Shown: in pieces, positions 2,697 through 43,162 of the stretch
Numbering within the stretch: the stretch's first letter is position 1
Layout: every line of letters begins with the position of its first letter
Virus record (IMG/VR): IMGVR_UViG_3300033997_000092
Location: 124,001 to 188,000 of that record
Strand: one strand, 5' to 3'
Length of the DNA: 64,000 nt
Made by a program: the position numbers and the translations under genes
Notes under the pieces: model-generated
Databases searched by the model: none
What the model saw: only the letters and a program-made list of their open reading frames with translations
Told to the model about the DNA's origin: nothing

Positions 2697-3851
2697 TTAA
2701 TAAATACGTTGTAAGTTTTTCAAAGTCTTCACACAGGCTTTCATCAAATCACCTGTAAGCTTGGTGCCTGTAAGGTAATAAGACATAGTTTCTGCAAAGA
2801 ATTCTTTGGGATTCGTCATAGCATATTCGCTTGGGTCCATAACAGGAATGCCGATGTCGGTCATTGAAGGCCACAGGCGCTCCAGACGATCTTTGCGTCC
2901 AGTGTCATGCAACAAGTCCAAATCGAAACGATCCAGCTTGTGTACTTTTTTGATGTACGCTATGACTTCTTTTAAAATTACTGATGTGGTGTCATCCGCC
3001 ATCTCTTTTAAGAAATCGCCGATGGAACCATCGTAAGTCATAACTTCTTTGAGAAGACCACGCAGTTTCTTCTCGTCATATTTGCTGACTGTAATGCGCT
3101 TGGCATACAGGCTGAGCCACTTAGCACGGACATCTATTGGAACCATGTGGAACCAAATACCATGTGCTGCTTCGTGCAGTAGTACATACTGAAGATACTT
3201 AGCATCGTCCAACGGAATGTTGTTCAATGACATAACATCTTTACCGCCTTCACCTTCTTTGGTACGGACGTACTTGTAAGTACCTGCCCATTTACCAGCA
3301 CGTGAACGCAGCTCAATATAACCCATACGGTTGATAAAGCCTTCACACTTGTTCTTTTTCAAGATAGTGTAGGCATCAGCAAAAGCACCGACCAAAGTAA
3401 TACGTTCTTCTTTGGTGAATGAGGAACGGTATACACGCAAGTCACACCAGTCTTTGATAGTCAGGGTGCGCTGGTAAGGTTCCACGTTAACATTGAACAC
3501 TTTACCGAATGGAGGATTAGGTCCAAGATTAGCAATGACGTTGTAAGGCTCGACATCGATCTGAACAGAAGTATCGTCTTCTTCAACGCCTTTCTCAAGC
3601 ATGGCACGGCGCTTACCTATAGCAAGAGCCAGATGATTCTTGCCGTTGTACTTAACAACAATGTAGTCATCGGAATCATAAGGTATATGGCGTTCCTGTT
3701 TTTCTTCTACAGGAGCTTTTGCTTTTTTGTCTTTTTTATCAGACTTGGCTGCTTTGTCTTTCTTTTTCTTTTTGTCAGAAACAGGATCAGACTTGCCTTT
3801 GACTTTCTTTTTAGTTTCTTGCCCTTCTGGGGCGCGTAACCTGCTTATCAT
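2697..3851 (-). CDS. Zincin-like metallopeptidase-domain protein with Lys-rich N-terminus
   Basis: LLHEAAHG (HExxH) and YAMTNPKEFFAETMSYY. Confidence 0.6.
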   Translation of the reverse strand: MISRLRAPEGQETKKKVKGKSDPVSDKKKKKDKAAKSDKKDKKAKAPVEEKQERHIPYDSDDYIVVKYNGKNHLALAIGKRRAMLEKGVEEDDTSVQIDVEPYNVIANLGPNPPFGKVFNVNVEPYQRTLTIKDWCDLRVYRSSFTKEERITLVGAFADAYTILKKNKCEGFINRMGYIELRSRAGKWAGTYKYVRTKEGEGGKDVMSLNNIPLDDAKYLQYVLLHEAAHGIWFHMVPIDVRAKWLSLYAKRITVSKYDEKKLRGLLKEVMTYDGSIGDFLKEMADDTTSVILKEVIAYIKKVHKLDRFDLDLLHDTGRKDRLERLWPSMTDIGIPVMDPSEYAMTNPKEFFAETMSYYLTGTKLTGDLMKACVKTLKNLQRIY

Positions 3852-4768
3852 AAAAAACCCCGCACGTGGTTAAAATAGAAATCAAGACGTTCAATAGGAG
3901 TGTAGCGTCTAGTTATTAGTTTACACATTCCATCGTAGACAAAATGCAATAAATACTTGTTGTCTGTATTCCTTGGGTCGACCTCACTGACAACACGGGC
4001 AGAGTATTTTAACCCAGAACGCAGTGGAATGTTTAGGTTATAAATACGGTTCGACAAGTCATCAGGAGTAAAAGAACCTGGTGTAACTATAGCAAAGAAC
4101 TCGCTGTGTTTGTGAGGCCAAGCAGGAACTTCCTGAATGTGATCAAACAACATAATCAATGCGGTACGACTGAAATTTTCCTGATACGGAGCGGCTATTT
4201 CACAGAAAGTCCTGAGTGCATTAATAGTGCCGCCTTCAGTTTCAAATTTAAAACTGTGTTTTGAGAATTCACGCTGAATCTTAGCTGAGGCTGCAAACAG
4301 TCGTTTTAGGTTACCATCGAGATATTTTAACTCGGTAGCACCAGAAGACTTGCGAACGAACACACTTTGAGGAGTGCTGCCAAAGCTAAGCATAATGCGG
4401 TCACGTTCGATATAAATACCCATGAACTTAGGACGCTGTTCATAAATCTTGCCGATGTCAACAGTAGATACAGGCAGAAAGAAATCACCGAGAAGTAAAG
4501 GAGCGCTAACACGAACCAAACTAGATTGCATGTAAACGCGGAATTGAGTTTCGTTCAGTACAATAGGAATATGTCGATCAATAACACCTTTAGCGAAAGT
4601 CAAAAGCTTTTTGTTGTCTTCTGTTATTCCGTAGAGGTTGACAGTGTTTCCTTTACGTAACATCTGTTCTATCTGCGATAAGTGATCGGCTACCTTTTGA
4701 TATGTAGGCCCTCCGGGCACTGTATCTTGTCTGTTAAGCACGTATACAATCATAAGCGTGTTCCCCAC
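3848..4768 (-). CDS. Hypothetical protein
   Basis: 306-aa ORF overlapping the next gene by 4 nt. Confidence 0.7.
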   Translation of the reverse strand: MGNTLMIVYVLNRQDTVPGGPTYQKVADHLSQIEQMLRKGNTVNLYGITEDNKKLLTFAKGVIDRHIPIVLNETQFRVYMQSSLVRVSAPLLLGDFFLPVSTVDIGKIYEQRPKFMGIYIERDRIMLSFGSTPQSVFVRKSSGATELKYLDGNLKRLFAASAKIQREFSKHSFKFETEGGTINALRTFCEIAAPYQENFSRTALIMLFDHIQEVPAWPHKHSEFFAIVTPGSFTPDDLSNRIYNLNIPLRSGLKYSARVVSEVDPRNTDNKYLLHFVYDGMCKLITRRYTPIERLDFYFNHVRGFL

Positions 4769-4769
4769 A

Positions 4770-5480
4770 TGATCAGTTTGTTTTTATTGTGCGCTGCTGC
4801 GCGAAACGTGAGCGGGCTGGCGAAAAAATCGCCGCGCGGATCAAGATCATTTTCCGATCTTTACTAGCAGGAAATCTATTGTGGATCCATTAACCTATTT
4901 TAACATCTTAGCCAGGTAGATCCTAGATATAGAGGTCGTTTGGTTGCAGTGGAAACCAATAGACAGATCCGTCCCATGATACCGATTGATTCAATTGACC
5001 AGAGCACCAATTGTTATATGTTACTCCGGTGCTCCAGTTCCTAGTGTCCATGTCCTCTTGATCCCAGTGTCTGTGGAATGTCTTTAGTGATCAACTGGAA
5101 TCCAGCTTACCGTTAGGTAACATCGCCTGCGCTCCGGTTACCTAACGATCAGTTGAACTACTGTACCAGGTACTAACTAGCCGGGTGAACAGTTTATCAG
5201 TTGAACTCTGTGAGAGTTAATGGGATACAAGCTGACGAATCTTAATTTACAGTATCCTATTTATAACAATACCATGGTAGTATATGTACATCCAATGCCT
5301 ATAGCCTATACTATCATACAATGCCTATACACTACAGATATACACGTATAATAGCTATAAGTACAATTTAGGGGGTTGCTGCAAAACACCAAGGAAAAAG
5401 CTCGAAAAATCGGAAAACTTTTGACCCAGTTTCTAAAAATAGTCCAAAGAAAAATCGTGTTTTTAGACCTGAAAAAGGCT
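4770..5480. other. Candidate replication origin / regulatory non-coding region
   Basis: ~700 bp without a credible ORF; 10 GATC sites in 4771-5150, inverted and direct repeats, AT-rich tract, A-tracts about one helical turn apart. Confidence 0.45.
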
Positions 5481-5503
5481 AGGAAGATTGCTCAGCCTAG
5501 CCT
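5471..5503 (-). terminator. Intrinsic terminator
   Basis: AGGCTAGG/CCTAGCCT stem followed by T-run on - strand, just after the 5511 stop. Confidence 0.6.
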
Positions 5504-5510
5504 CATAGTT

Positions 5511-5732
5511 TTATTGCTTTTCAAAACGACTACGCATTTTAGCGCCGATTTGTTTCATTAACGATTCGATGCGATCACCGTCACCGTCCTCTACAGCTTT
5601 AGTTAATTGTTCTCCTAAGTCACTGGACACAATTTTCATAAAGCCTGATAACATCAGACCGCGGCCCTTTTTCTTTTTGGGCTTGCGGCGTGACTCAGAT
5701 ACTAACTTATCCAAATGCAGTGTTACTTTCAT
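5511..5732 (-). CDS. Small hypothetical protein
   Basis: 73-aa ORF with GAGG RBS. Confidence 0.65.
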   Translation of the reverse strand: MKVTLHLDKLVSESRRKPKKKKGRGLMLSGFMKIVSSDLGEQLTKAVEDGDGDRIESLMKQIGAKMRSRFEKQ

Positions 5733-5739
5733 ATTTACC

Positions 5740-6915
5740 TCAGTAGATTTTGAACGATTTGAATACGCCTGACAAGAATTCTGATCTTTGTAAGGATCTG
5801 CATGTTACTGACCATTGCCAGAGTTCTTTCTTTGCTGTTGATTTGCGTGGAGCGTTGTTGATTTTAAGAACAAGGTTACGTTTCGGTATGACGATAACGT
5901 CTCCTGACCTCAGTGAGCCTGCACTCTCCGGTAATACTACTTGAATGTCACCTATAGTAGTTTCATCCCTGTAGTTGAGTACATCTTGCTCTGTGTTGAT
6001 GTTTCCTTTTATATCTACTTGGAGCAGTTTGAATATCAATGTAGCGTGGGTAAATTCACGGACGTCACGTACACGCACAGGCATGTTCTTGCCTCGGAAG
6101 CTTTCTATGTATGCGCGCGTTACTACATCGCCCGTAGGCGTTTTTAACGGAAATGTAGCAGGATGTACTACCTCATTATTCCTGATGCTGTAGGACACGT
6201 CCACGAAGTATTTTGGCACCAGGATATTGAATTCTACATAGCTGTTTTCGTCACCTGAGTGAACATACACATTTGGCTTACGAGAAGTATCTTGGTAATA
6301 TCCGTAAGTTTCAGATATGTTGTTGTATGCCAGTATTTGATATTTGTAGTTGACTACATCGAACGCTGGAATGAATCCTTCTGAATAACACACGCCGCAG
6401 TTTTCTTCACTGCCACTGAACTCAGTTGGTAAGAAGTGTTCTGTTGCTCTTGTGTCGTCCTCTGGATTATCTACTGCTGACCTTGTCACTTGGTCGCGGT
6501 TTAGAAAATCTGACAACTCTTTTGGCTGTCTGCTTTCGACAGGATTGTAATCGTGTTTATCGTAGACACCTTCGCCGAACATAGTGTCTGAGCCTAAATC
6601 AATGCGTACTTTGGAAGCGTTGCCTCCTGACATTTGATTTGTTGGAAGTGTTACTTTTGACGATTCCGAATCCGACACATAATCATCGTTACTCTGTAAG
6701 GATTCTATTGTCATAACACTGTGACTGCAAGAGCAAGGAATACCTATGCGAGTTCTACGCATAAGCACTATATCCACTGCATCTACAGCAAGCGCGTTCT
6801 CCACTTTATCGCGGAAAGGGTGCAGTTGTTCGTCAAGTCGTGCCTGTGCTGTGTTGGACGTAAAGTTCAAAGCTCTACGTGCGTTTCTTCTTCTACCTGA
6901 TCCTATATCAGCCAT
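5740..6915 (-). CDS. Putative virion structural (neck/head-completion-like) protein
   Basis: Start probably ATG 6915 (GGAG RBS); CSC...CGVCYSEGF motif; C-terminal beta-rich 'LRSGDVIVI' segment. Confidence 0.45.
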   Translation of the reverse strand: MADIGSGRRRNARRALNFTSNTAQARLDEQLHPFRDKVENALAVDAVDIVLMRRTRIGIPCSCSHSVMTIESLQSNDDYVSDSESSKVTLPTNQMSGGNASKVRIDLGSDTMFGEGVYDKHDYNPVESRQPKELSDFLNRDQVTRSAVDNPEDDTRATEHFLPTEFSGSEENCGVCYSEGFIPAFDVVNYKYQILAYNNISETYGYYQDTSRKPNVYVHSGDENSYVEFNILVPKYFVDVSYSIRNNEVVHPATFPLKTPTGDVVTRAYIESFRGKNMPVRVRDVREFTHATLIFKLLQVDIKGNINTEQDVLNYRDETTIGDIQVVLPESAGSLRSGDVIVIPKRNLVLKINNAPRKSTAKKELWQWSVTCRSLQRSEFLSGVFKSFKIY

Positions 6916-6996
6916 TATCCGACTCCTATACAATTCTCGATATTAAATTATTCGATGTTAATTTGAATCTGATTATAGTTGAAGGAACTACCAGAT

Positions 6997-7230
6997 ATGT
7001 TTAAAGCTTTCATTACAAAAATACTCAAAAATGTGCTGAGTTCCGAATTCCAGTCTTTGGAAAATCGAGTGAGTGAATTGGATAAAGAAGTGGCTGACTT
7101 GCGTTCAAAGCACAGCGACTTGGCGCAACGCCATTTGACATTGCACGACAAATACCGCAGAACTAAAAATGTGGTACGCAATATTGAACGTGGTATGACT
7201 CGTAAACAAAAATTGGCGAAAGCTGCATGA
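6997..7230 (+). CDS. Small coiled-coil hypothetical protein
   Basis: AAGGA RBS, heptad pattern, ATGA overlap with next gene. Confidence 0.65.
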   Translation: MFKAFITKILKNVLSSEFQSLENRVSELDKEVADLRSKHSDLAQRHLTLHDKYRRTKNVVRNIERGMTRKQKLAKAA

Positions 7231-12439: not shown

Positions 12440-13399
12440 ATGGCTAAAGACAAAGTGAAAGAAAAGAAGAAAGCTAAGGCTGTTGACAAGAATGATGTCA
12501 AGTCAGGCAAGAAGCCAGGCAGGAGAGAACAGGCTGCCAGCTCCAAGAAGCTGATTAAGTCAAAAGGTCCTGAGTTTAAAAAGAACAACAAGACCGCCTC
12601 ACGCACTACTGATTTTACGGTAGATGATTTCAAAGAAGCTCCGTATAACCCGCGATATATCAGCCCTGTAGAATTGCAGCGCTTAGGTAAATCGATGACA
12701 ACATACGGTGACTTGAGCGGTATTGTTTTCAACAGGCACTCGGGTGTGACTATTTCTGGTCACCAGCGCTTGAAGCAAGTACGCTTGTATGAACACGGCA
12801 CTGTACTGAAAGATGTAAAAGATGACGGTTACGGTACTGTTGCTGAAGGTTACGTATGGTACAAAGGTCCTAACGGCAAAGTTCGCATTCCATTACGTGT
12901 AGTTGATTGGTCAGATAAGAAAGCTGAATTCGCAGCCAACATCGCAGCAAACGCACACGGTGGTTCGTTCGATAACAAACTGCTGGCTAACTTGGTTGAA
13001 GCAATTGAACCAGGTGACGGCGAGTTCGATATTGATTTACTTGGTATCGATCCTATTACAATCAAAACACTTCCTTATGAAGACAAGATCGGCGATGCTA
13101 ATAAAGAAACGTCTCCGTCAGGTTCCGGTCCATCGTTTGCAGAGTTCAACTCAGAAAGCTTCGACGGCGAGTTGGTACATGAATGTCCTCGTTGTAGTAT
13201 GCGCTTCAACGACAACGGTGAAGAAGTTGTCCGTAAAGGTTACTCTGAGCCTGAAGACGATGACGAAGAAGATGAAAAGCCTTCAAAGAAAAAGTCAAAG
13301 TCAAAGAAGGACAAAGACAAGCCTTTGAAGAAAGGCGCAAAAGAGCTTGCTGAGTTTTCTACTCCGGCTAAGAAAAAGCCCAAGAAGAAATCAAAATAA
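12440..13399 (+). CDS. ParB/Srx-like domain protein with Zn ribbon and Lys-rich termini
   Basis: APYNPRYIS, YGDLSGIVFN, ISGHQRL, ANIAAN, HECPRC. Confidence 0.8.
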   Translation: MAKDKVKEKKKAKAVDKNDVKSGKKPGRREQAASSKKLIKSKGPEFKKNNKTASRTTDFTVDDFKEAPYNPRYISPVELQRLGKSMTTYGDLSGIVFNRHSGVTISGHQRLKQVRLYEHGTVLKDVKDDGYGTVAEGYVWYKGPNGKVRIPLRVVDWSDKKAEFAANIAANAHGGSFDNKLLANLVEAIEPGDGEFDIDLLGIDPITIKTLPYEDKIGDANKETSPSGSGPSFAEFNSESFDGELVHECPRCSMRFNDNGEEVVRKGYSEPEDDDEEDEKPSKKKSKSKKDKDKPLKKGAKELAEFSTPAKKKPKKKSK

Positions 13400-13411
13400 A
13401 AGGAACGATTC

Positions 13412-14479
13412 ATGGCCAAAACAAAAAAGGCTGAAAAAGAATCGGCAGCAATGCGTATCAGTAGGCTGGTACCATTCGCTGTCCCTTCTATTAAGAAAAT
13501 CAACAAACATCCTAAACGCTATAAGTCCATAAGCTTGTTCGCTGGCTGTGGTGGCAGTAGTACGGGAATGAAGATGGCTGGATTTGATGTAATCTATGCC
13601 AATGAGTTTGTTGATATTGCCGCCGATACTTATGCTGCCAATGCTACATCACATACAAAAGTTGATCGCACAGACATTCGTAAAATCAAGTTCACTTCCC
13701 TTATGCGTGAACTTGGACTTAAAGAAGGCGAACTTGATCATATGGACGGTTCTCCTCCTTGCTCTAGTTTTAGTACAGCAGGTAAGCGTGAAGAAGATTG
13801 GGGTAAAGAGAAAGCCTACTCCGAAGATAAAGTCCAACGTACGGATGACCTGTTCCATGAATTCTGCCGCGCGCTACGTGCGTTTAAGCCAAAGACTTTT
13901 GATGCAGAGAATGTTTCTGGTCTTGTGAAGGGCATGGCTAAAGGTTACTTCCGTGAGATTGCTAAGCACCTTGAAGATTGTGGTTATGTTGTTGCTGCAC
14001 AGCTTCTTGATGCTAGTTGGCTCGGTGTTCCGCAGGCCCGTCAACGTATTGTGTTTGTTGGTGTCCGCAAAGACCTTGCAAAGAAGTACGGCTTCAAGCC
14101 TGTGTTTCCTAAACCTCTGTATCGTCAGGTTACTGTTCGTGAGTGTTTGCCTGACATAGCACGTATCAAAACGAAAGTACAGAGCGTTATCAAGTACGTT
14201 GATAGTAACAGGCCTAACAGTACGATTACAGCCAGTGATAGTTTAACTAGCCCGACAGCTAAATTCAGTGACGGTGGCTACATTGAAACATTTGACGGCG
14301 AACAACGCAAGTACAACATAGATGAACTGCGCGTCATCTGTGGGTTCCCTAGCGATTTCAAATTGTTAGGAACCTATGAACAACAATTTGAACGTCTTGG
14401 TCGTAGTCATGTGCCTGTGCAGATGTATTGGGTATGTAAAACTATTGCCGATGAAATTCTCGATAAGATTAAGGATTAG
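13412..14479 (+). CDS. C5-cytosine DNA methyltransferase family protein; predicted carboxymethyltransferase
   Basis: SLFAGCGG, GSPPCSSFS, ENV, PQARQRI, GFP; motif X reads GRS instead of GNS. Confidence 0.9.
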   Translation: MAKTKKAEKESAAMRISRLVPFAVPSIKKINKHPKRYKSISLFAGCGGSSTGMKMAGFDVIYANEFVDIAADTYAANATSHTKVDRTDIRKIKFTSLMRELGLKEGELDHMDGSPPCSSFSTAGKREEDWGKEKAYSEDKVQRTDDLFHEFCRALRAFKPKTFDAENVSGLVKGMAKGYFREIAKHLEDCGYVVAAQLLDASWLGVPQARQRIVFVGVRKDLAKKYGFKPVFPKPLYRQVTVRECLPDIARIKTKVQSVIKYVDSNRPNSTITASDSLTSPTAKFSDGGYIETFDGEQRKYNIDELRVICGFPSDFKLLGTYEQQFERLGRSHVPVQMYWVCKTIADEILDKIKD

Positions 14480-17536: not shown

Positions 17537-18192
17537 CACAAGAAAATCAATTAAATGGAACTGAATCCGCAGAAGCGGCTGAGTTGCGCCACGCCCGTGA
17601 ATTAATATCAAAGGCCGAAGATGTGATACAAAGACTTCGTGCCAGTTCTGACGTAGCCACTGAGGAGCTTGGCTCTGTTACAAGTAAGCTGCTTGACCTG
17701 CGTGTTGAACATCGCCTTTTAAAGTCCAAGCTTGATGCCACTTTATTCGACAAAGAAGCATTCAAGCAAAAGTGCGACAAGTTAGAAACAACTGTTAAAA
17801 ACTTGGAAGCCGAACTTGTCAAGCGTAGCACTCAGCTATTACGTGCTTCCAAGCGTAACCAAGAATCACTTGAATTATTTTCCAAGTGCGCTGTACTTTT
17901 CGCTTCTTATGTTTCAAGCTCGAAGCTTCCTGTTTATGTACTCACTCGCTTGAAAGAAATAAACTTTCCTAAGCCAAATACGATCCGTCGTGTTGTTGGT
18001 TTGCCTGCAGAAGCGTGTGCTGTAGAAGCTGTTAAGGTCGTGTTTGATCCGTTTAAGTCTATCAACAAAACTCCACCGACATTCACAAATTCAGATATGC
18101 CGATGGACTACTTCTTAAACGCATTTTATCACACCGTGTCTCCTATCGTTATTGAAGATGCGGAAGTGGCTGCTGGCGAGGAAGCCTCGTAA
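17533..18192 (+). CDS. Coiled-coil hypothetical protein
   Basis: 219-aa ORF with heptads. Confidence 0.65.
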   Translation: MTQENQLNGTESAEAAELRHARELISKAEDVIQRLRASSDVATEELGSVTSKLLDLRVEHRLLKSKLDATLFDKEAFKQKCDKLETTVKNLEAELVKRSTQLLRASKRNQESLELFSKCAVLFASYVSSSKLPVYVLTRLKEINFPKPNTIRRVVGLPAEACAVEAVKVVFDPFKSINKTPPTFTNSDMPMDYFLNAFYHTVSPIVIEDAEVAAGEEAS

Positions 18193-19208
18193 TGCTCGAA
18201 GGTAACCTTACTGGTGGCCAAATACAGGAAGTCATGGATAGGCTACTGTATGATGCACTCGCTCCTGTTATCAGATACACTAACGTATTTGACACCCAGC
18301 TTGTGTATCTTTTGGCTACCGTAACAAAGAATAAAAAGCGCAAGGTATGCGCTGTAAGCAGGCCTGAGACAATTGACTTTTTGTGTAAGGCACTTGCTAC
18401 TTCTGACCCAGAAGAAAAAATGATGTACATAAAGAAGTTGAAGATCGAACGCTCGTTCATTCACGTTTTCCTTAAACGGTTTGTTCAGGCGTATAAAGGT
18501 CCAATCTTCTCATTGTACTACCAGTTTATGTCAGACACTAAAAACAGACAGATATATTCCAAGCGCATGAAGCCTTATTTGGCAAGTGTTGGTTGTTCTG
18601 GCCGTTCCGAAATATTCATAGCGATAACTTCCTGTGAATCTAGTCTGACCCGTTTCTACCATTACTTCGACCGGGTCATTTCTCAGTATTACAAGCTGTG
18701 CTACTTAAAAGCAAAAGGCTTGGTTGATACTAATCCGAATAACAACTATGATTTCCATGACCTCGTGCAGAATTTAAGGCAGCGTACCATAACTGCCTTG
18801 AATAAGTACGATGCCTCTAATGGAGCCTTGACATCTTACATCAAGTGGTGGTTATTCAACAGCTTGACTTGTGGTAGTGGCCAGCATGAATACGGTTTGG
18901 CGTACACTGTTCCACAAAACGTAAAAAGAAAGTTGATGCAGTCTGACGGTCTTGGTGTCAACTTCTCTGTTAGTATGGACTCATTATTATCTGAATCTGA
19001 TGATGGTGAGAATTCAAACTTACACAACCTTATAGCTGGTGAGACTCCAGAGCTGGACGATGAAATCGCGTCCATATCGGAACTCAACCGTATGTATATG
19101 TTTGCCAAGAACGCTGACCCTCACGGCATAGCTAGACTGAGTTTAGAGCTGCCTGAAGTATTCAGTCCTAAAGAGTTGGCTAACATGCGTAAGACAACTG
19201 TGTTATAA
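18192..19208 (+). CDS. Phage sigma70-family RNA polymerase sigma factor
   Basis: Region-2-like DLVQNLRQRTITALNKYDASNGALTSYIKWWLFNSL, then YTVP and SVSMD. Confidence 0.7.
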   Translation: MLEGNLTGGQIQEVMDRLLYDALAPVIRYTNVFDTQLVYLLATVTKNKKRKVCAVSRPETIDFLCKALATSDPEEKMMYIKKLKIERSFIHVFLKRFVQAYKGPIFSLYYQFMSDTKNRQIYSKRMKPYLASVGCSGRSEIFIAITSCESSLTRFYHYFDRVISQYYKLCYLKAKGLVDTNPNNNYDFHDLVQNLRQRTITALNKYDASNGALTSYIKWWLFNSLTCGSGQHEYGLAYTVPQNVKRKLMQSDGLGVNFSVSMDSLLSESDDGENSNLHNLIAGETPELDDEIASISELNRMYMFAKNADPHGIARLSLELPEVFSPKELANMRKTTVL

Positions 19209-23710: not shown

Positions 23711-23787
23711 GGCCCCTTAGCTCAGTTGGTTAGAGCACTCCCCTCATAAGGGATTGGTCTCCAGTTCAAATCTGGAAGGGGCCACCA
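23711..23787 (+). tRNA. tRNA with CAU anticodon, most likely tRNA-Ile2 (lysidine, reads AUA)
   Basis: GGCCCCT/AGGGGCC acceptor stem as in enterobacterial ileX, D arm, CT-CAT-AA loop, TTCAAAT T loop, encoded ACCA; lacks initiator features. Confidence 0.9.
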
Positions 23788-41822: not shown

Positions 41823-42272
41823 ATGAAACAACTGAAGAAAATCGGGAGTTCAGCAACCCGTCTGTTAAAGATTGCTGATGCACTGGACAAACAAGCAGAA
41901 GCGTTACGCGCTGAAGCGAATGCAATCACCGGTCAGGTAGCCGAAGCTTCAGGTGCTGAAGCTCCTGCTAAAGGCAAAGGCAAAAAAGCTGAAAAGCCTG
42001 CCAAAGCTGAAAAAGCCGAAAAGTCTGGCAAAGGCAAAAAAGACAAAAAGGCTGAAAAAGCAGCTAAGTCTGAAAAAGCCGAAAAGTCTGGCAAAGGCAA
42101 AAAGGACAAAAAGGCTGAAAAAGCTGAAGCTGCTGAAAAGCCGGCCAAGTCTAAAAAAGACAAAAAGGCCGCTAAGTCTGAAAAGCCTGGTAAAGGCAAA
42201 AAGGACAAAAAATCAAAAAAGCCTGAAGGGGCCGATACTGAGGATTTCGACTTCGGCGATGAAGACGAGTAA
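41823..42272 (+). CDS. Histone H1-like Lys/Ala-rich protein
   Basis: N-terminal coiled coil plus AEKSGKGKKDKK repeats. Confidence 0.75.
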   Translation: MKQLKKIGSSATRLLKIADALDKQAEALRAEANAITGQVAEASGAEAPAKGKGKKAEKPAKAEKAEKSGKGKKDKKAEKAAKSEKAEKSGKGKKDKKAEKAEAAEKPAKSKKDKKAAKSEKPGKGKKDKKSKKPEGADTEDFDFGDEDE

Positions 42273-42302
42273 ACCCGATGTCGGTTCCCGTTGAACTGAA
42301 GG

Positions 42303-42329
42303 AAAGCGGGGCTTAGGCTCCGCTTTTTT
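42303..42329 (+). terminator. Intrinsic terminator
   Basis: AAAGCGGGGC-TTAG-GCTCCGCTTTTTT. Confidence 0.85.
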
Positions 42330-42347
42330 GCTTTCTGAGGACCATCT

Positions 42348-42770
42348 ATGATTCTTGAATTAACACAATATTTGGCACAGTGCAGTTCTCCGGGTATGGC
42401 GCTACAGGCATTGCACAGTAACGCTGTTATCTTGGCACAGGAACTAAATCAATTACGCTTCGAGTTTGATTCTTGTGAAGTTACTGTTGCCAAGAATTCA
42501 CATTTCCTAAAAGATTCCAAATCAAACTGGGACACGGCAGCATACAAACTCGCAATCAGTAAAGCTGAGCGGGACAGAACTCTGCTGTCTTATCGTATCG
42601 TCCAAGCAGAGAAGCTCCAAAAGATCTTACTCAGTAAGATCAGTGATCTGTCTGGAATTTCTGTTCTGGACGTTGAAGATTTGTTAGATCCGTCTCTTAT
42701 GGATCAAGTAATATCCCTGTCCCAGATCCATTTAGAGAAGGCATTATCATCTATCAAACAACTGGAGTGA
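42348..42770 (+). CDS. Hypothetical protein
   Basis: 140 aa, GAGGA RBS. Confidence 0.65.
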   Translation: MILELTQYLAQCSSPGMALQALHSNAVILAQELNQLRFEFDSCEVTVAKNSHFLKDSKSNWDTAAYKLAISKAERDRTLLSYRIVQAEKLQKILLSKISDLSGISVLDVEDLLDPSLMDQVISLSQIHLEKALSSIKQLE

Positions 42771-43162
42771 TTATGGACTCTGCACTTAAGGATTGTATAT
42801 TTAAAGTGCAGGCTGCAAAAGCCGCACTTGCTCAATCGAACAAAAATTTGATTGAGTATGTTTTCCGCGTATGTCCGTTAGGAAACTACTGCCTGCTTGT
42901 TACTATAGATCCAGACAAGCTACAAGGTCGATTATCTCCAGATTTTGAATTTGAAGCGTGTGTCTCTTTGCAGATATTGCACCCTGTTAGCATGGAAGAG
43001 GCACACTTATCTCCCACTACATCGGATAGTGTAACACTTCAAGAACTAACTAAAATCAGAAGAATTCTTGAATCTGGTCAGTTGCCTGAGCGTGACGACA
43101 CACTAACAAAACGATTTATCGAAGTTATGGAAATGAAATATAGCGGTGAGCAACATGGCTAA
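42767..43162 (+). CDS. Hypothetical protein
   Basis: 131-aa coupled ORF. Confidence 0.6.
   Translation: MIMDSALKDCIFKVQAAKAALAQSNKNLIEYVFRVCPLGNYCLLVTIDPDKLQGRLSPDFEFEACVSLQILHPVSMEEAHLSPTTSDSVTLQELTKIRRILESGQLPERDDTLTKRFIEVMEMKYSGEQHG

What the first reader, a model, noticed from the sequence alone, without database searches (positions are those of the whole stretch)
4770..5480. Origin-like region: GATC cluster, repeats, AT-rich tract and phased A-tracts
Seen: GATC at 4771, 4839, 4845, 4856, 4884, 4919, 4966, 5060, 5089 and 5147 (10 in 380 bp; about 1.5 expected at random). An 11-bp inverted repeat at 5111-5121/5137-5147. Direct repeats ATCAGTTGAACT (5148, 5196) and CAATGCCTATA (5293, 5319). 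A TA-rich stretch at 5255-5370, A-tracts roughly every 10-11 bp at 5383-5476, and a leftward CTGTAAAT promoter at 5245-5252. The region lies near the main strand switch (~6950). Inference: a transcription-primed origin, possibly sensitive to Dam/SeqA, or a packaging/terminus site.
Basis: partly seen in the sequence, partly recalled or inferred. Interest (0 to 1): 0.6.

Follow-up and report, generated by a model that had tools for sequence, protein, structure and literature searches.

The report
Origin-like control region of jumbo phage
A 742-base gene-free stretch in the replication gene cluster of an uncultivated 261-kb jumbo phage carries the genome's most extreme GATC, TA-step and bent-DNA signals. 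Relatives keep the same layout, so it is probably a replication origin or a long regulatory leader, and which one cannot be settled by computation.

Summary
The GATC cluster (10 in 380 bp) is the densest in the whole 261,032-bp phage genome (scan statistic P about 2e-4). The TA-rich tract is the genome's densest TA-step region. The A/T-tract phasing is the strongest in non-coding DNA.

The region is a 742-bp gap (4769-5510) between two leftward genes in a T4-like replication and recombination module, 1.4 kb from the main strand switch. On the minus strand it reads:
- intrinsic terminator;
- phased A/T tracts;
- TA-rich, easily melted DNA with short direct repeats;
- phage promoter motif TACTGTAAAT;
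- a roughly 490-nt untranslated leader with all ten GATCs and several inverted repeats;
- a GC-rich tail;
- a fast-evolving orphan gene.

The gap is syntenic in all relatives examined. GATC enrichment recurs in 8 of 8 complete leaders of the subclade. Four relatives carry their genome's only long dA:dT homopolymer there. The phage encodes a T4-Dam-like methylase.

My best reading is a transcription-activated, possibly Dam-sensitive origin (about 0.4). A structured regulatory leader or ncRNA is nearly as likely (about 0.3). No DnaA boxes, no Rfam match and no RNA or coverage data were found. The element is unannotated in every relative.

The parts
5740..6933 (-). 397-aa conserved gene (phrog_21298, function unknown; 4 invariant Cys). 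I used it as the anchor to find syntenic loci.
   Evidence: The AlphaFold model is low-confidence (pLDDT 55.6) and has no significant PDB fold match.
5511..5732 (-). 73-aa gene, the last gene of the upstream leftward operon. It matches only the C-terminal part of phrog_31583.
5470..5502 (-). Intrinsic terminator of the upstream operon. The hairpin is GGCUAGG-N12-CCUAGCC (5477-5502), followed by UUUUUC.
   Evidence: The fold gives -16.6 kcal/mol. An equivalent hairpin plus T-run follows the small gene in L013, L016, L020, L023, L025 and PaBG.
5351..5476 (.). Phased A/T tracts with a 10-11 bp period, predicted to be intrinsically bent DNA.
   Evidence: This is the second strongest periodicity in the genome and the strongest in non-coding DNA. 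Its power (0.80) exceeds all 200 shuffles. The same holds in 9 of 15 gaps overall, this one included, among them those of AD1, fHe-Yen9-02 and PaBG.
5238..5370 (.). TA-rich, easily melted segment with short direct repeats: a 20-nt unit at 5289-5308 and 5315-5334 with core CAATGCCTATA, and TATAGGC three times on the minus strand. I regard it as a candidate unwinding element or activator-binding region.
5245..5254 (-). Phage promoter-like motif TACTGTAAAT, pointing leftward.
   Evidence: The motif is enriched genome-wide and sits upstream of genes on the same strand, including clamp loader, primase and SSB. The same motif occupies the equivalent place in L012, L013, L016, L020, L023-L027 and NCTB. 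A phage sigma factor gene lies at 18192-19208.
4754..5244 (-). Untranslated leader of about 490 nt between the promoter and the next gene. No conserved ORF lies in it.
   Evidence: Other CTGTAAAT copies lie 27-113 nt from their gene; this one lies 484-499 nt away. No peptide similarity to any relative's gap was found. RNA fold z-scores are -3.66 (minus strand) and -2.72 (plus strand).
4771..5150 (.). Cluster of ten GATC sites, all inside the leader or at its junction with the gene.
   Evidence: All ten are retained in the 99.5%-identical variant contigs L009 and L011.
5086..5207 (.). Three copies of a TCAACTG-type element: two direct 12-mers (5148-5159, 5196-5207) and one inverted copy (5086-5097). 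They flank the 11-bp perfect hairpin 5111-5121/5137-5147, so one arm has two alternative partners.
   Evidence: An analogous arrangement of one arm with two partners is seen in L012, L016 and L020.
4998..5038 (.). Hairpin with a 13-bp stem (CUGGAGCACCGG...GGUGCUCUGG on the minus strand).
4838..5064 (.). Long-range inverted repeat GGATCAAGA/TCTTGATCC (4838-4846 and 5056-5064). Each arm contains a GATC.
   Evidence: GATCTTGATC(C) recurs in L012, L016 and L025.
4790..4842 (.). GC-rich tail of the leader with CGCGCA-type repeats, directly upstream of the next gene.
   Evidence: The sense strand is C-rich and G-poor in relatives (C/G per 80-nt window: 38/14, 35/15, 32/18) but only weakly so here (24/17).
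3848..4753 (-). 301-aa orphan gene downstream of the leader. It evolves very fast.
   Evidence: It is 23% identical to the L012 counterpart, against 64% for the next gene. It has no Pfam, PHROG or NCBIfam hit and no homologue other than itself among 5.8 billion proteins. The model is unusable (pLDDT 38).

Best explanation
The gap is a conserved cis-acting control region of the phage replication module. Most likely it is a transcription-activated origin of replication.

Shown by the analysis:
- The upstream leftward operon ends at an intrinsic terminator.
- Next come about 120 bp of phased A/T tracts (bent DNA), then about 130 bp of the most TA-rich, nearly least stable DNA of the genome, carrying short direct repeats.
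- A phage-type promoter (TACTGTAAAT) follows. Its motif class also precedes the clamp-loader, primase and SSB genes.
- The promoter fires leftward into a roughly 490-nt untranslated stretch full of inverted repeats and GATC sites.

Inferred, not shown:
- Transcription from this promoter, and the negative supercoiling behind the polymerase, help open the TA-rich segment, or the transcript supplies a primer, as at T4 oriE/oriF/oriG.
- The short repeats bind a phage or host factor.
- The GATC cluster, methylated by the phage's own T4-Dam-like enzyme, marks the locus as unreplicated or just replicated. That could limit or time firing, as GATC clusters do at oriC and the P1 origin.

The same transcript also serves as mRNA for the fast-evolving downstream gene.
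For: Three independent genome-wide extremes fall within 700 bp:
- GATC density is first in the genome.
- TA-step density is first, and duplex stability is third lowest.
- A/T-tract phasing is first among non-coding DNA.

Location:
- The gap lies inside a T4-like replication and recombination module: SbcCD-like nuclease, clamp loader, RuvC-like resolvase, primase, Cas4-like exonuclease, SSB and UvsX-like recombinase.
- It lies 1.4 kb from the main point of transcriptional divergence. Active T4 origins also sit near such points (PMC3016281).

Synteny:
- A gene-free gap sits at the same place in all relatives examined: AD1, Alexandra, pEa_SNUABM_23, PaBG (1,478 bp), NCTB, L012, L013, L016, L020 and L023-L027.
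- In fHe-Yen9-02 the stretch is annotated with two small ORFs.
- Phased A/T tracts beat all shuffles in 9 of 15 gaps, this one included.

GATC enrichment:
- It is seen in 8 of 8 complete leaders of the subclade (P from 1e-2 to 4e-7; pooled 80 sites against 21 expected, all ten leaders counted).
- Among the other 4-bp palindromes only CCGG, at low counts in the GC-rich tail, is enriched as much.
- The sites share no extended flanking consensus, so GATC itself is the selected unit.

Methylase: the phage encodes a Dam-family enzyme closest to T4 Dam, and the gene is widespread in the family.

Homopolymers:
- In four relatives the only dA:dT homopolymer of 16 or more in the entire genome lies in this leader.
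- It appears as poly-T or poly-A on the sense strand depending on the genome. That argues for a DNA-level role, such as an unwinding element downstream of a promoter, as in T4 oriF/oriG.

Inverted repeats: they are conserved with compensatory changes but fold equally well on both strands.
Against: - There is no direct evidence of initiation. GC skew simply follows gene orientation, and only assembled contigs were available, with no raw reads or coverage profiles.
- There are no DnaA boxes, and no IHF consensus site in this phage.
- The direct repeats are few (2-3 copies) and short, so calling them iterons is weak.
- No recognisable initiator gene is adjacent. Both neighbours are orphans with uninformative models.
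- In this phage the easily melted DNA is at and upstream of the promoter, not downstream.
- The 3' part of the leftward transcript is C-rich, which disfavours a stable R-loop.
- GATC clusters are absent from the homologous gaps of Alexandravirus and PaBG, although Alexandravirus phages carry Dam.
- Compensatory changes in helices are also what a functional RNA predicts.
Confidence: 0.4

Rival explanations
1. The gap encodes a long structured 5' leader or a separate non-coding RNA. The TACTGTAAAT promoter makes a roughly 490-nt untranslated RNA (370-870 nt in relatives). Its alternative helices, one arm with two possible partners, act as an attenuator, antiterminator or processing signal that controls the fast-evolving downstream gene, or the RNA acts in trans. 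The bent, TA-rich DNA upstream is then simply an activating region of a strong promoter.
For: - The promoter motif is well supported, and its distance to the gene is exceptional.
- The long leader is conserved across the subclade.
- The leader folds better than shuffles (z = -3.66).
- Among four relatives, 12 predicted pairs show compensatory changes. They include a hairpin with the invariant loop CGAAGUGA and a long-range helix of 28-39 nt.
- L016, L020 and L025 carry hairpin plus U-run terminator-like modules inside the leader.
- The C-rich, G-poor tail resembles a Rho-utilisation site.
- The pattern of one arm with two alternative partners recurs in the window, L012, L016 and L020.
Against: - Sense and antisense strands fold equally well, both singly and in the alignment (-35.3 against -35.6 kcal/mol), so nothing points to the transcribed strand.
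- Rfam gives no match, even at E up to 10.
- The covariance model of the conserved hairpin finds only the four sequences it was built from, not the window, L012, L026 or L027.
- An RNA reading gives no reason for GAUC enrichment.
- It does not explain homopolymers that are poly-U in some relatives and poly-A in others.
- It does not explain why the gap persists in Alexandravirus and PaBG, where the promoter lies about 40 nt from the gene.
- No RNA data were available.
Confidence: 0.3
2. The GATC cluster is a DNA-level, methylation-dependent switch on transcription. It lies in the transcribed leader and is bound when unmethylated or hemimethylated, by a host SeqA-like protein or a phage protein. 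Expression of the downstream orphan gene would then be tied to the replication or methylation state of the phage DNA, with no role in starting replication.
For: - GATC alone is the conserved unit, with no extended flanking consensus.
- The phage carries a T4-Dam-like methylase.
- SeqA silences or activates promoters that have dense GATC, such as dnaA, gidA and lambda promoters (PMC8488378).
- The cluster lies between a promoter and its gene.
Against: - The host is unknown, so it is unknown whether SeqA is present.
- The GATC sites lie 100-480 nt downstream of the promoter, not over it.
- This reading does not explain the family-wide conserved bent and TA-rich half, or the homopolymers.
Confidence: 0.12
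3. The region is a packaging (pac) site or physical terminus, recognised by the terminase and gated by Dam methylation as in phage P1.
For: - The P1 pac site is a 161-bp element with seven GATC-containing hexamers, and its cleavage depends on methylation (PMC10028697).
- Records of this phage family are circular or permuted.
- The source JGI contig is cut 50-180 bp from the cluster.
- The contigs or records of G005 and NCTB are cut inside the homologous leader.
Against: - In NCTB, G005 and L013 the cuts fall exactly in long homopolymers, which break assemblies.
- The 127-bp terminal repeat of the record is the size of an assembler overlap.
- Only 2 of the 10 GATCs sit in TGATCA/G hexamers, and those two are not grouped.
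- The region lies in the replication module, not next to a recognisable terminase gene. A Terminase_6C search of the genome found nothing, so the terminase was not located.
Confidence: 0.06
4. The region is a non-functional remnant of decayed genes, and its odd composition arose by chance.
For: - The 73-aa gene matches only the C-terminal quarter of a 253-position family, so some gene loss has occurred nearby.
- Half of AD1's apparent gap is probably unannotated coding sequence.
Against: - Three genome-wide extremes coincide in the gap.
- The layout and the GATC enrichment are conserved across lineages that share only 34-47% protein identity in the neighbouring gene.
- No peptide similarity to anything was found in any frame.
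Confidence: 0.04

Closest known systems
Bacteriophage T4 origins oriF (uvsY) and oriG: a phage promoter plus an A+T-rich unwinding element, primed by an R-loop
   Same: - A phage-specific promoter of the class that also drives replication genes.
- A location in a T4-like replication and recombination gene set, near a point of transcriptional divergence (PMC3016281).
- One transcript could serve as both primer and mRNA.
- Relatives carry a unique long dA:dT tract downstream of the promoter.
   Different: - T4 minimal origins are about 100 bp, with the unwinding element directly downstream of the promoter. Here the least stable DNA is at and upstream of the promoter.
- The downstream leader is about 490 nt and of average composition.
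- Its 3' end gives a C-rich RNA.
- T4 origins have no GATC cluster.
Bacteriophage T4 oriE and iteron-type origins (R6K gamma, P1 oriR, lambda ori)
   Same: - Short direct repeats next to an A+T-rich segment and a promoter.
- The repeat sequences are lineage-specific while their position is conserved.
- An adjacent fast-evolving gene could encode the matching binding protein.
- From my own knowledge, not checked in a paper here: P1 oriR combines repeats with GATC sites that must be methylated.
   Different: - Only 2-3 short repeat copies are present, against 4 or more evenly spaced 12-22-bp iterons.
- No initiator is recognisable.
- The GATC sites are not in the A+T-rich part.
- There are no DnaA boxes.
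E. coli oriC and the dnaA promoter region: GATC clusters sequestered by SeqA
   Same: An unusually high GATC density. PMC8488378 describes this for oriC, and from memory oriC has 11 GATCs in 245 bp, comparable with the 10 in 380 bp here. There is also an adjacent easily melted segment, bent DNA, and a promoter transcribing away from it.
   Different: - There are no DnaA boxes.
- The methylase here is the phage's own.
- The host, and whether it has SeqA, are unknown.
- The GATCs lie in a transcribed leader rather than in the unwinding element.
ColE1-type origin (RNA II preprimer)
   Same: From my own knowledge of ColE1: a structured untranslated transcript of about 500 nt runs from a promoter towards a defined downstream point. 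Leaders in this clade are 370-870 nt long.
   Different: - ColE1 needs a G-rich RNA segment pairing with C-rich template. Here the RNA tail is C-rich.
- No antisense RNA I equivalent was seen.
- The transcript runs on into a protein-coding gene.
Phage P1 pac site
   Same: A cluster of GATC sites in a phage that encodes its own Dam-type methylase, with bent DNA nearby (PMC10028697).
   Different: - P1 pac lies within the small terminase gene and consists of 4 + 3 TGATCA/G hexamers within 161 bp.
- Here the sites span 380 bp and only two are such hexamers.
- The neighbours here are replication genes.

Membership tests
T4 oriF/oriG-type R-loop origin | Phage-specific promoter within the element | tested here: met
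   TACTGTAAAT lies at 5254-5245 on the minus strand. The motif is 3-fold over-represented, and 19 of 30 copies are intergenic; all but the gap copy lie 27-113 nt upstream of a gene on the same strand. This is sequence evidence only, with no transcript data.
T4 oriF/oriG-type R-loop origin | A+T-rich DNA unwinding element immediately downstream of the promoter | tested here: not met
   The least stable DNA is 5238-5342, at and upstream of the promoter. Downstream 50-bp windows have average stability, -63 to -76 kcal/mol, apart from a moderate dip near 4860. Relatives do have a unique long dA:dT tract 235-320 nt downstream.
T4 oriF/oriG-type R-loop origin | Persistent R-loop that primes leading-strand synthesis; autonomous replication of a plasmid during infection | not testable with these tools
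   This needs an infection experiment. The C-rich RNA tail is unfavourable for R-loop stability.
Iteron-type origin (T4 oriE, R6K, P1 oriR, lambda) | Cluster of several evenly spaced direct repeats | tested here: inconclusive
   Found: two 20-nt units 26 bp apart, TATAGGC three times, and ATCAGTTGAACT twice plus one inverted copy. These are few and short, and no shuffle test was run on them.
Iteron-type origin (T4 oriE, R6K, P1 oriR, lambda) | Adjacent gene for a matching initiator protein | tested here: inconclusive
   The neighbouring 301-aa and 397-aa proteins have no family assignment, and their models are unusable or uninformative. The 301-aa gene evolves fast, as a specificity partner might.
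DnaA/oriC-type origin | Cluster of DnaA boxes (TTWTNCACA) | tested here: not met
   There are no strict matches in the gap, and at most one each in L013, NCTB and PaBG.
DnaA/oriC-type origin | High GATC density with sequestration of hemimethylated sites | tested here: inconclusive
   The density criterion is met, and a Dam-family methylase is present. Methylation state and SeqA binding cannot be tested, and the host is unknown.
P1-type pac site | Two groups of TGATCA/G hexamers flanking a cleavage site within about 160 bp, inside or next to the terminase gene | tested here: not met
   Only the GATCs at 4771 and 5089 sit in TGATCA, and they are 318 bp apart. The neighbours are replication genes.
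ColE1-type RNA-primed origin | G-rich preprimer segment pairing with C-rich template near the initiation point | tested here: not met
   The sense strand of the leader's 3' tail has C at or above G here (24/17 per 80-nt window) and strongly so in relatives.
Any described RNA family (Rfam 15) | Match to a curated covariance model | tested here: not met
   The only hit at gathering score in the 64-kb window is a tRNA at 23711. At E up to 10 the region gives only four chance-level hits, all outside the leader.

The most novel reading that the evidence does not exclude
This locus may be the previously unrecognised principal replication origin of a whole family of jumbo phages (Alexandravirus, Baikalvirus/PaBG, Lu11, NCTB and many uncultivated relatives). 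It would be built from bent DNA, an easily melted TA-rich or homopolymer tract, and a phage-sigma-dependent promoter. In one subclade it would have gained a GATC-dense, inverted-repeat-rich initiation zone whose firing is gated by the phage's own Dam methylase, giving a phage-autonomous counterpart of oriC-style sequestration.
Probability: 0.25. Interest if true: 0.75.

Novelty: new variant of a known kind. Interest (0 to 1): 0.6.

Why it matters
As far as my literature searches here found, no replication origin has been mapped or proposed in this phage family, and this region is unannotated in every relative.

The analysis points to one short, conserved, statistically exceptional locus where an origin can be tested directly in cultured relatives such as Erwinia, Dickeya, Yersinia and Pseudomonas phages.

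If it is an origin, the GATC cluster together with a phage-encoded Dam would be a rare case of a lytic phage timing its own initiation by methylation.

If it is an RNA, it is a new 400-900-nt structured leader class.

There is also a practical point. The long homopolymers at this locus explain why assemblies of these phages break there, so contig ends at this place should not be read as genome termini.

Tried and rejected
DNA and RNA searches that found nothing useful:
- Nucleotide searches of the phage collection, near and distant, gave no match.
- Rfam at gathering score and at E up to 10 gave nothing relevant.
- The gap sequences of distant relatives do not align with ours.
- A six-frame peptide comparison of all gaps found no conserved ORF involving ours.
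- A covariance model of the hairpin conserved in L016, L020, L023 and L025 found only its own training sequences, so no motif-level homology to the window could be shown.

Replication and expression evidence:
- Whole-genome GC skew follows gene orientation at all four strand switches and cannot locate an origin.
- All runs that hold the phage are kept as assembled contigs. The four runs I laid gave only low-depth fragments, with no starts, strand or RNA evidence.

Neighbouring proteins:
- Atlas look-alikes scored below the informative range. A weak Piwi-like lead for the 301-aa protein (0.79) was not pursued.
- The AlphaFold models had pLDDT 55.6 and 38.3.
- Foldseek against the PDB gave no significant match.
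- The large word-based protein search was used twice, because the family scans left both neighbouring proteins open.

Specific ideas tested and dropped:
- DnaA boxes and IHF sites are absent from the window's gap.
- Contig and record ends fall in this gap in NCTB, G005 and L013. I considered that they might mark a physical terminus and rejected it, because the ends fall in long homopolymers.
- The second-ranked GATC cluster and the top-ranked A-tract periodicity (window about 42,000-43,000) are coding sequence and unrelated.
- Presence of Dam does not track the presence of a GATC cluster across the family.
- Triple-GATC pattern scans of the GATC-poor relatives found nothing.
Full report
**What the window is**

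The window is bases 124,001-188,000 of a 261,032-bp virus record that IMG/VR classes as having direct terminal repeats. The repeat is 127 bp, the size of an assembler overlap, so I treat it as a circular assembly. The record I was given is a rotated, reverse-complemented copy of JGI contig Ga0310127_000048.

No nucleotide match exists in the phage collection. The proteins place the phage as a distant relative, about 30-36% identity, of the following:
- the Erwinia and Dickeya Alexandravirus phages;
- Yoloswag;
- Pseudomonas phages PaBG, Lu11 and HRDY3;
- Yersinia phage fHe-Yen9-02;
- phage NCTB.

The closest relatives among 5.8 billion proteins share only 39-47% identity in the anchor gene and come from metagenome contigs. 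Near-identical copies occur in subsurface and wastewater metagenomes.

**Checking the observation**

GATC:
- The motif is under-represented in the genome: 619 sites, 2.37 per kb against 3.77 per kb expected from composition.
- The ten sites between 4771 and 5147 form the densest 400-bp window of the genome. The runner-up has seven and is coding.
- Under uniform placement of 619 sites, a maximum of ten or more appears in 0.02% of 5,000 simulations.

Other signals:
- 5255-5370 has 26 TA steps in 116 bp. The genome mean is 7.7 and the genome maximum, 27, lies at 5247.
- 5238-5342 is the third least stable 100-bp duplex of the genome.
- A/T tracts around 5351-5476 show the second strongest 10-11-bp periodicity in the genome. 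The strongest is a lysine-rich coding repeat at 41950-42270.
- The inverted and direct repeats are exact.

Three independent genome-wide extremes therefore coincide within 700 bp.

**Anatomy**

The region is a 742-bp gene-free gap (4769-5510) between two leftward genes. Read on the minus strand, in the direction of transcription, it contains:
- the end of a 73-aa gene (5511-5732);
- an intrinsic terminator (hairpin 5477-5502, -16.6 kcal/mol, then UUUUUC);
- phased A/T tracts;
- the TA-rich segment with short direct repeats (TATAGGCATTG-type units);
- the motif TACTGTAAAT (5254-5245);
- about 490 nt without any conserved reading frame. This stretch holds all ten GATCs, an 11-bp perfect hairpin, a 13-bp hairpin, three copies of a TCAACTG element (two direct, one inverted) and a long-range repeat GGATCAAGA/TCTTGATCC;
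- a GC-rich tail (4790-4842);
- a 301-aa gene (3848-4753).

**The promoter motif**

CTGTAAAT behaves like a phage promoter:
- It occurs 30 times against about 10 expected.
- 19 copies are intergenic, although only about 8% of the genome is intergenic.
- All intergenic copies but the one in this gap lie 27-113 nt upstream of a gene on the same strand. The genes include clamp loader, primase, a ParB-like gene, SSB and a tRNA.
- The copy in the gap lies 484-499 nt from its gene, which is exceptional.

A phage sigma factor is encoded at 18192-19208, and PaBG is reported to encode one too (PMC7412058).

**Genomic context**

The neighbours form a T4-like replication and recombination module:
- SbcC- and SbcD-like nuclease;
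- clamp loader;
- a polynucleotide-kinase-like protein;
- a RuvC-like resolvase;
- primase;
- a Cas4-like exonuclease;
- DNA methyltransferases;
- SSB;
- a UvsX-like recombinase.

The main switch from leftward to rightward genes is at about 6950, 1.4 kb from the gap. A second divergent switch lies at about 231.3 kb of the genome. GC skew follows gene orientation at every switch and so says nothing about replication.

**Comparative evidence: the gap**

A gene-free gap at the same place, after the homologues of the 397-aa gene and the small gene, exists in all relatives examined:

| Relative | Gap length |
|---|---|
| AD1 | 968 bp annotated, about 400 bp real |
| pEa_SNUABM_23 | 495 bp |
| Alexandra | 498 bp |
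| PaBG | 1,478 bp |
| NCTB | spans the record start |
| L012 | 824 bp |
| L013 | at least 740 bp |
| L016 | 1,142 bp |
| L020 | 998 bp |
| L023-L027 | present |

In fHe-Yen9-02 the stretch is annotated with two small ORFs.

The terminator and the phased A/T tracts are widespread. Periodicity exceeds all 200 shuffles in 9 of 15 gaps, this one included, among them those of AD1, fHe-Yen9-02, pEa_SNUABM_23 and PaBG.

Short repeated motifs lie between the bent DNA and the promoter. They differ from lineage to lineage:
- TATAGGC in this phage;
- ACCACCATGGT in L012;
- AACCACC in L013;
- TGTAGCT-type in AD1 and fHe-Yen9-02.

**Comparative evidence: the leader**

In Alexandravirus the promoter-like motif lies about 40 nt from the next gene. 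There the conserved part is only the upstream, untranscribed half. In the subclade of this phage (L012, L013, L016, L020, L023-L027, NCTB) the promoter is followed by a 370-870-nt leader.

GATC is enriched in all eight complete leaders, with P from 1e-2 to 4e-7. Pooled over the ten leaders (the eight complete ones and two cut short at contig ends) there are 80 sites against 21 expected. This holds even in GATC-poor genomes. Among the other 4-bp palindromes only CCGG, at low counts in the GC-rich tail, is enriched as much. The 79 sites analysed share no extended consensus beyond a mild A/T preference, so GATC itself seems to be the selected unit.

Small blocks recur before the GC-rich tail: AATAGAT(C/T)T, GATCTTGATC(C) and CGCGCA-type repeats.

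**Homopolymers**

Several relatives have long simple tracts in the leader:
- T22G7 in L023 and L024;
- A26 in L027;
- A37 or more across the NCTB record junction;
- T26 or more in L013;
- (CTTTT)n in L025.

In G001, G004, G005 and NCTB this is the only dA:dT run of 16 or more in the whole genome. This explains why the NCTB record, the G005 contig and the L013 contig are cut in this gap. Those ends are therefore not evidence for a physical terminus. The tract is poly-T or poly-A on the sense strand depending on the genome, which fits a DNA-level role better than an RNA-level one.

**Methylase**

The phage encodes a Dam-family N6-adenine methyltransferase (Pfam MethyltransfD12, E = 1.5e-25). Its closest solved relative is T4 Dam. 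The gene is present in AD1, Alexandra, NCTB, fHe-Yen9-02, G002 and G005. It was not found in PaBG or in three incomplete records. Presence of Dam does not track presence of the GATC cluster.

**RNA or DNA?**

The leader folds better than shuffles on both strands (z = -3.66 and -2.72).

Among L016, L020, L023 and L025, 12 predicted pairs show compensatory changes. They include a hairpin with the invariant loop CGAAGUGA and a long-range helix with arms of 28-39 nt. In L016 and L020 that helix has two alternative 3' partners.

However, the reverse complement of the alignment scores the same (-35.6 against -35.3 kcal/mol). Single leaders show no consistent strand preference either. What is conserved is therefore the inverted repeats, and the transcribed strand is not singled out.

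A covariance model of the hairpin finds only its four training sequences. Rfam has nothing.

GAUC bases are predicted to pair more than average, largely with other GAUC sites. That is expected of a palindrome embedded in inverted repeats.

The sense strand of the leader tail is C-rich and G-poor. This is strong in relatives and weak here. It resembles a Rho-utilisation site and is unfavourable for an R-loop made by the leftward transcript.

**Neighbouring proteins**

The 397-aa protein has four invariant cysteines and a beta-rich C-terminal part. Its model is of low confidence and has no significant fold match.

The 301-aa protein has no homologue beyond its own cluster and no family hit in this phage or in the relatives' counterparts. 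Its model is unusable. It evolves much faster than its neighbours: 23% against 64% identity to L012, and 37% against 81% between L016 and L020. Neither protein can be called an initiator.

**Interpretation**

I rank a transcription-activated origin first (about 0.4), for these reasons:
- the position in the replication module near transcriptional divergence, as for T4 oriE, oriF and oriG (PMC3016281);
- family-wide conservation of an untranscribed bent and easily melted half;
- lineage-specific short repeats;
- a unique homopolymer tract whose orientation varies;
- selection on GATC itself in a phage that carries Dam.

The main counter-arguments:
- there is no direct evidence of initiation;
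- there are no DnaA boxes;
- the repeats are few;
- no initiator is recognisable;
- the unwinding element is on the wrong side for the T4 oriF model;
- the RNA tail is C-rich.

The other readings:
- A structured regulatory leader or ncRNA is nearly as likely (about 0.3). It is not exclusive of the origin reading, because at T4 origins one transcript is both primer and mRNA.
- A purely transcriptional Dam switch: about 0.12.
- A pac site: about 0.06.
- A non-functional remnant: about 0.04.

**Novelty**

The element is not annotated in any relative. It matches no curated RNA family. The literature I could search does not discuss it. It works like known transcription-activated or iteron-type phage origins, but it fails or cannot be tested on several of their defining features. 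I therefore file it as a new variant of a known kind, not as a member of any named family.

No step in this work was of a kind that needed to be referred.

Noticed in passing
G000:118411-118524 (about 5.5 kb left of the window start; L033:8411-8524): A short intergenic spacer upstream of the SbcD-like gene is the least stable 100-bp duplex of the whole genome. It also ranks third and fourth for A/T-tract phasing. It is a second origin-like or strong-promoter-like spot.
   Followed up: no
window 6926-7025: The divergent intergenic spacer at the main strand switch is the second least stable 100-bp duplex of the genome.
   Followed up: no
window 41823-42272 (+): A 149-aa ORF made of Lys/Ala/Glu-rich repeats (KAEKSGKGKKDKK-type) with an acidic tail. 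It produces the genome's strongest A-tract periodicity signal. It could be a basic DNA-binding or internal protein.
   Followed up: partly
window 42571-42970: The second densest GATC cluster of the genome (7 in 400 bp) lies inside two small ORFs (42348-42770 and 42767-43162).
   Followed up: partly
L023:5937-5965, L024 contig end, L027:6466-6491, L005/L034 (NCTB record junction), L013 contig end, L025:6133-6188: Long homopolymers or simple repeats sit in the homologous leaders. In four genomes they are the only dA:dT run of 16 or more. Assemblies and records break there, so those ends are not physical termini.
   Followed up: yes
window about 4590-4716: The source JGI contig Ga0310127_000048 is cut here, 50-180 bp from the GATC cluster. 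The record I was given is a rotated, reverse-complemented copy. No sequence feature explains the cut, so it may be chance.
   Followed up: partly
L002 (Dickeya phage AD1) 9200-9770: The AD1_214 annotation looks truncated at its N-terminus: it aligns with residues 188-531 of the fHe-Yen9-02 homologue. About half of AD1's 968-bp unannotated gap is therefore probably coding.
   Followed up: partly
L012:6556-6570, L026:5991-6003, L027:6028-6040: A conserved block, CTTTCTTTTCTTAWAAATCAATGACTTAC, lies upstream of the promoter in three divergent relatives. It contains a perfect IHF core consensus (AATCAATGACTTA). It is absent from the window.
   Followed up: partly
G000:18762-19616; window 12440-14479; window 18192-19208: The phage has a T4-Dam-like methyltransferase. 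It also has a ParB-N-like protein next to a second DNA methyltransferase, and a phage sigma factor (phrog_17569) that may read the CTGTAAAT promoters.
   Followed up: partly
window 3848-4753 (-): The 301-aa orphan gene's nearest language-model neighbours are all Piwi-domain clusters, but at a score (0.79) that shuffled proteins often reach. I did not pursue this.
   Followed up: no
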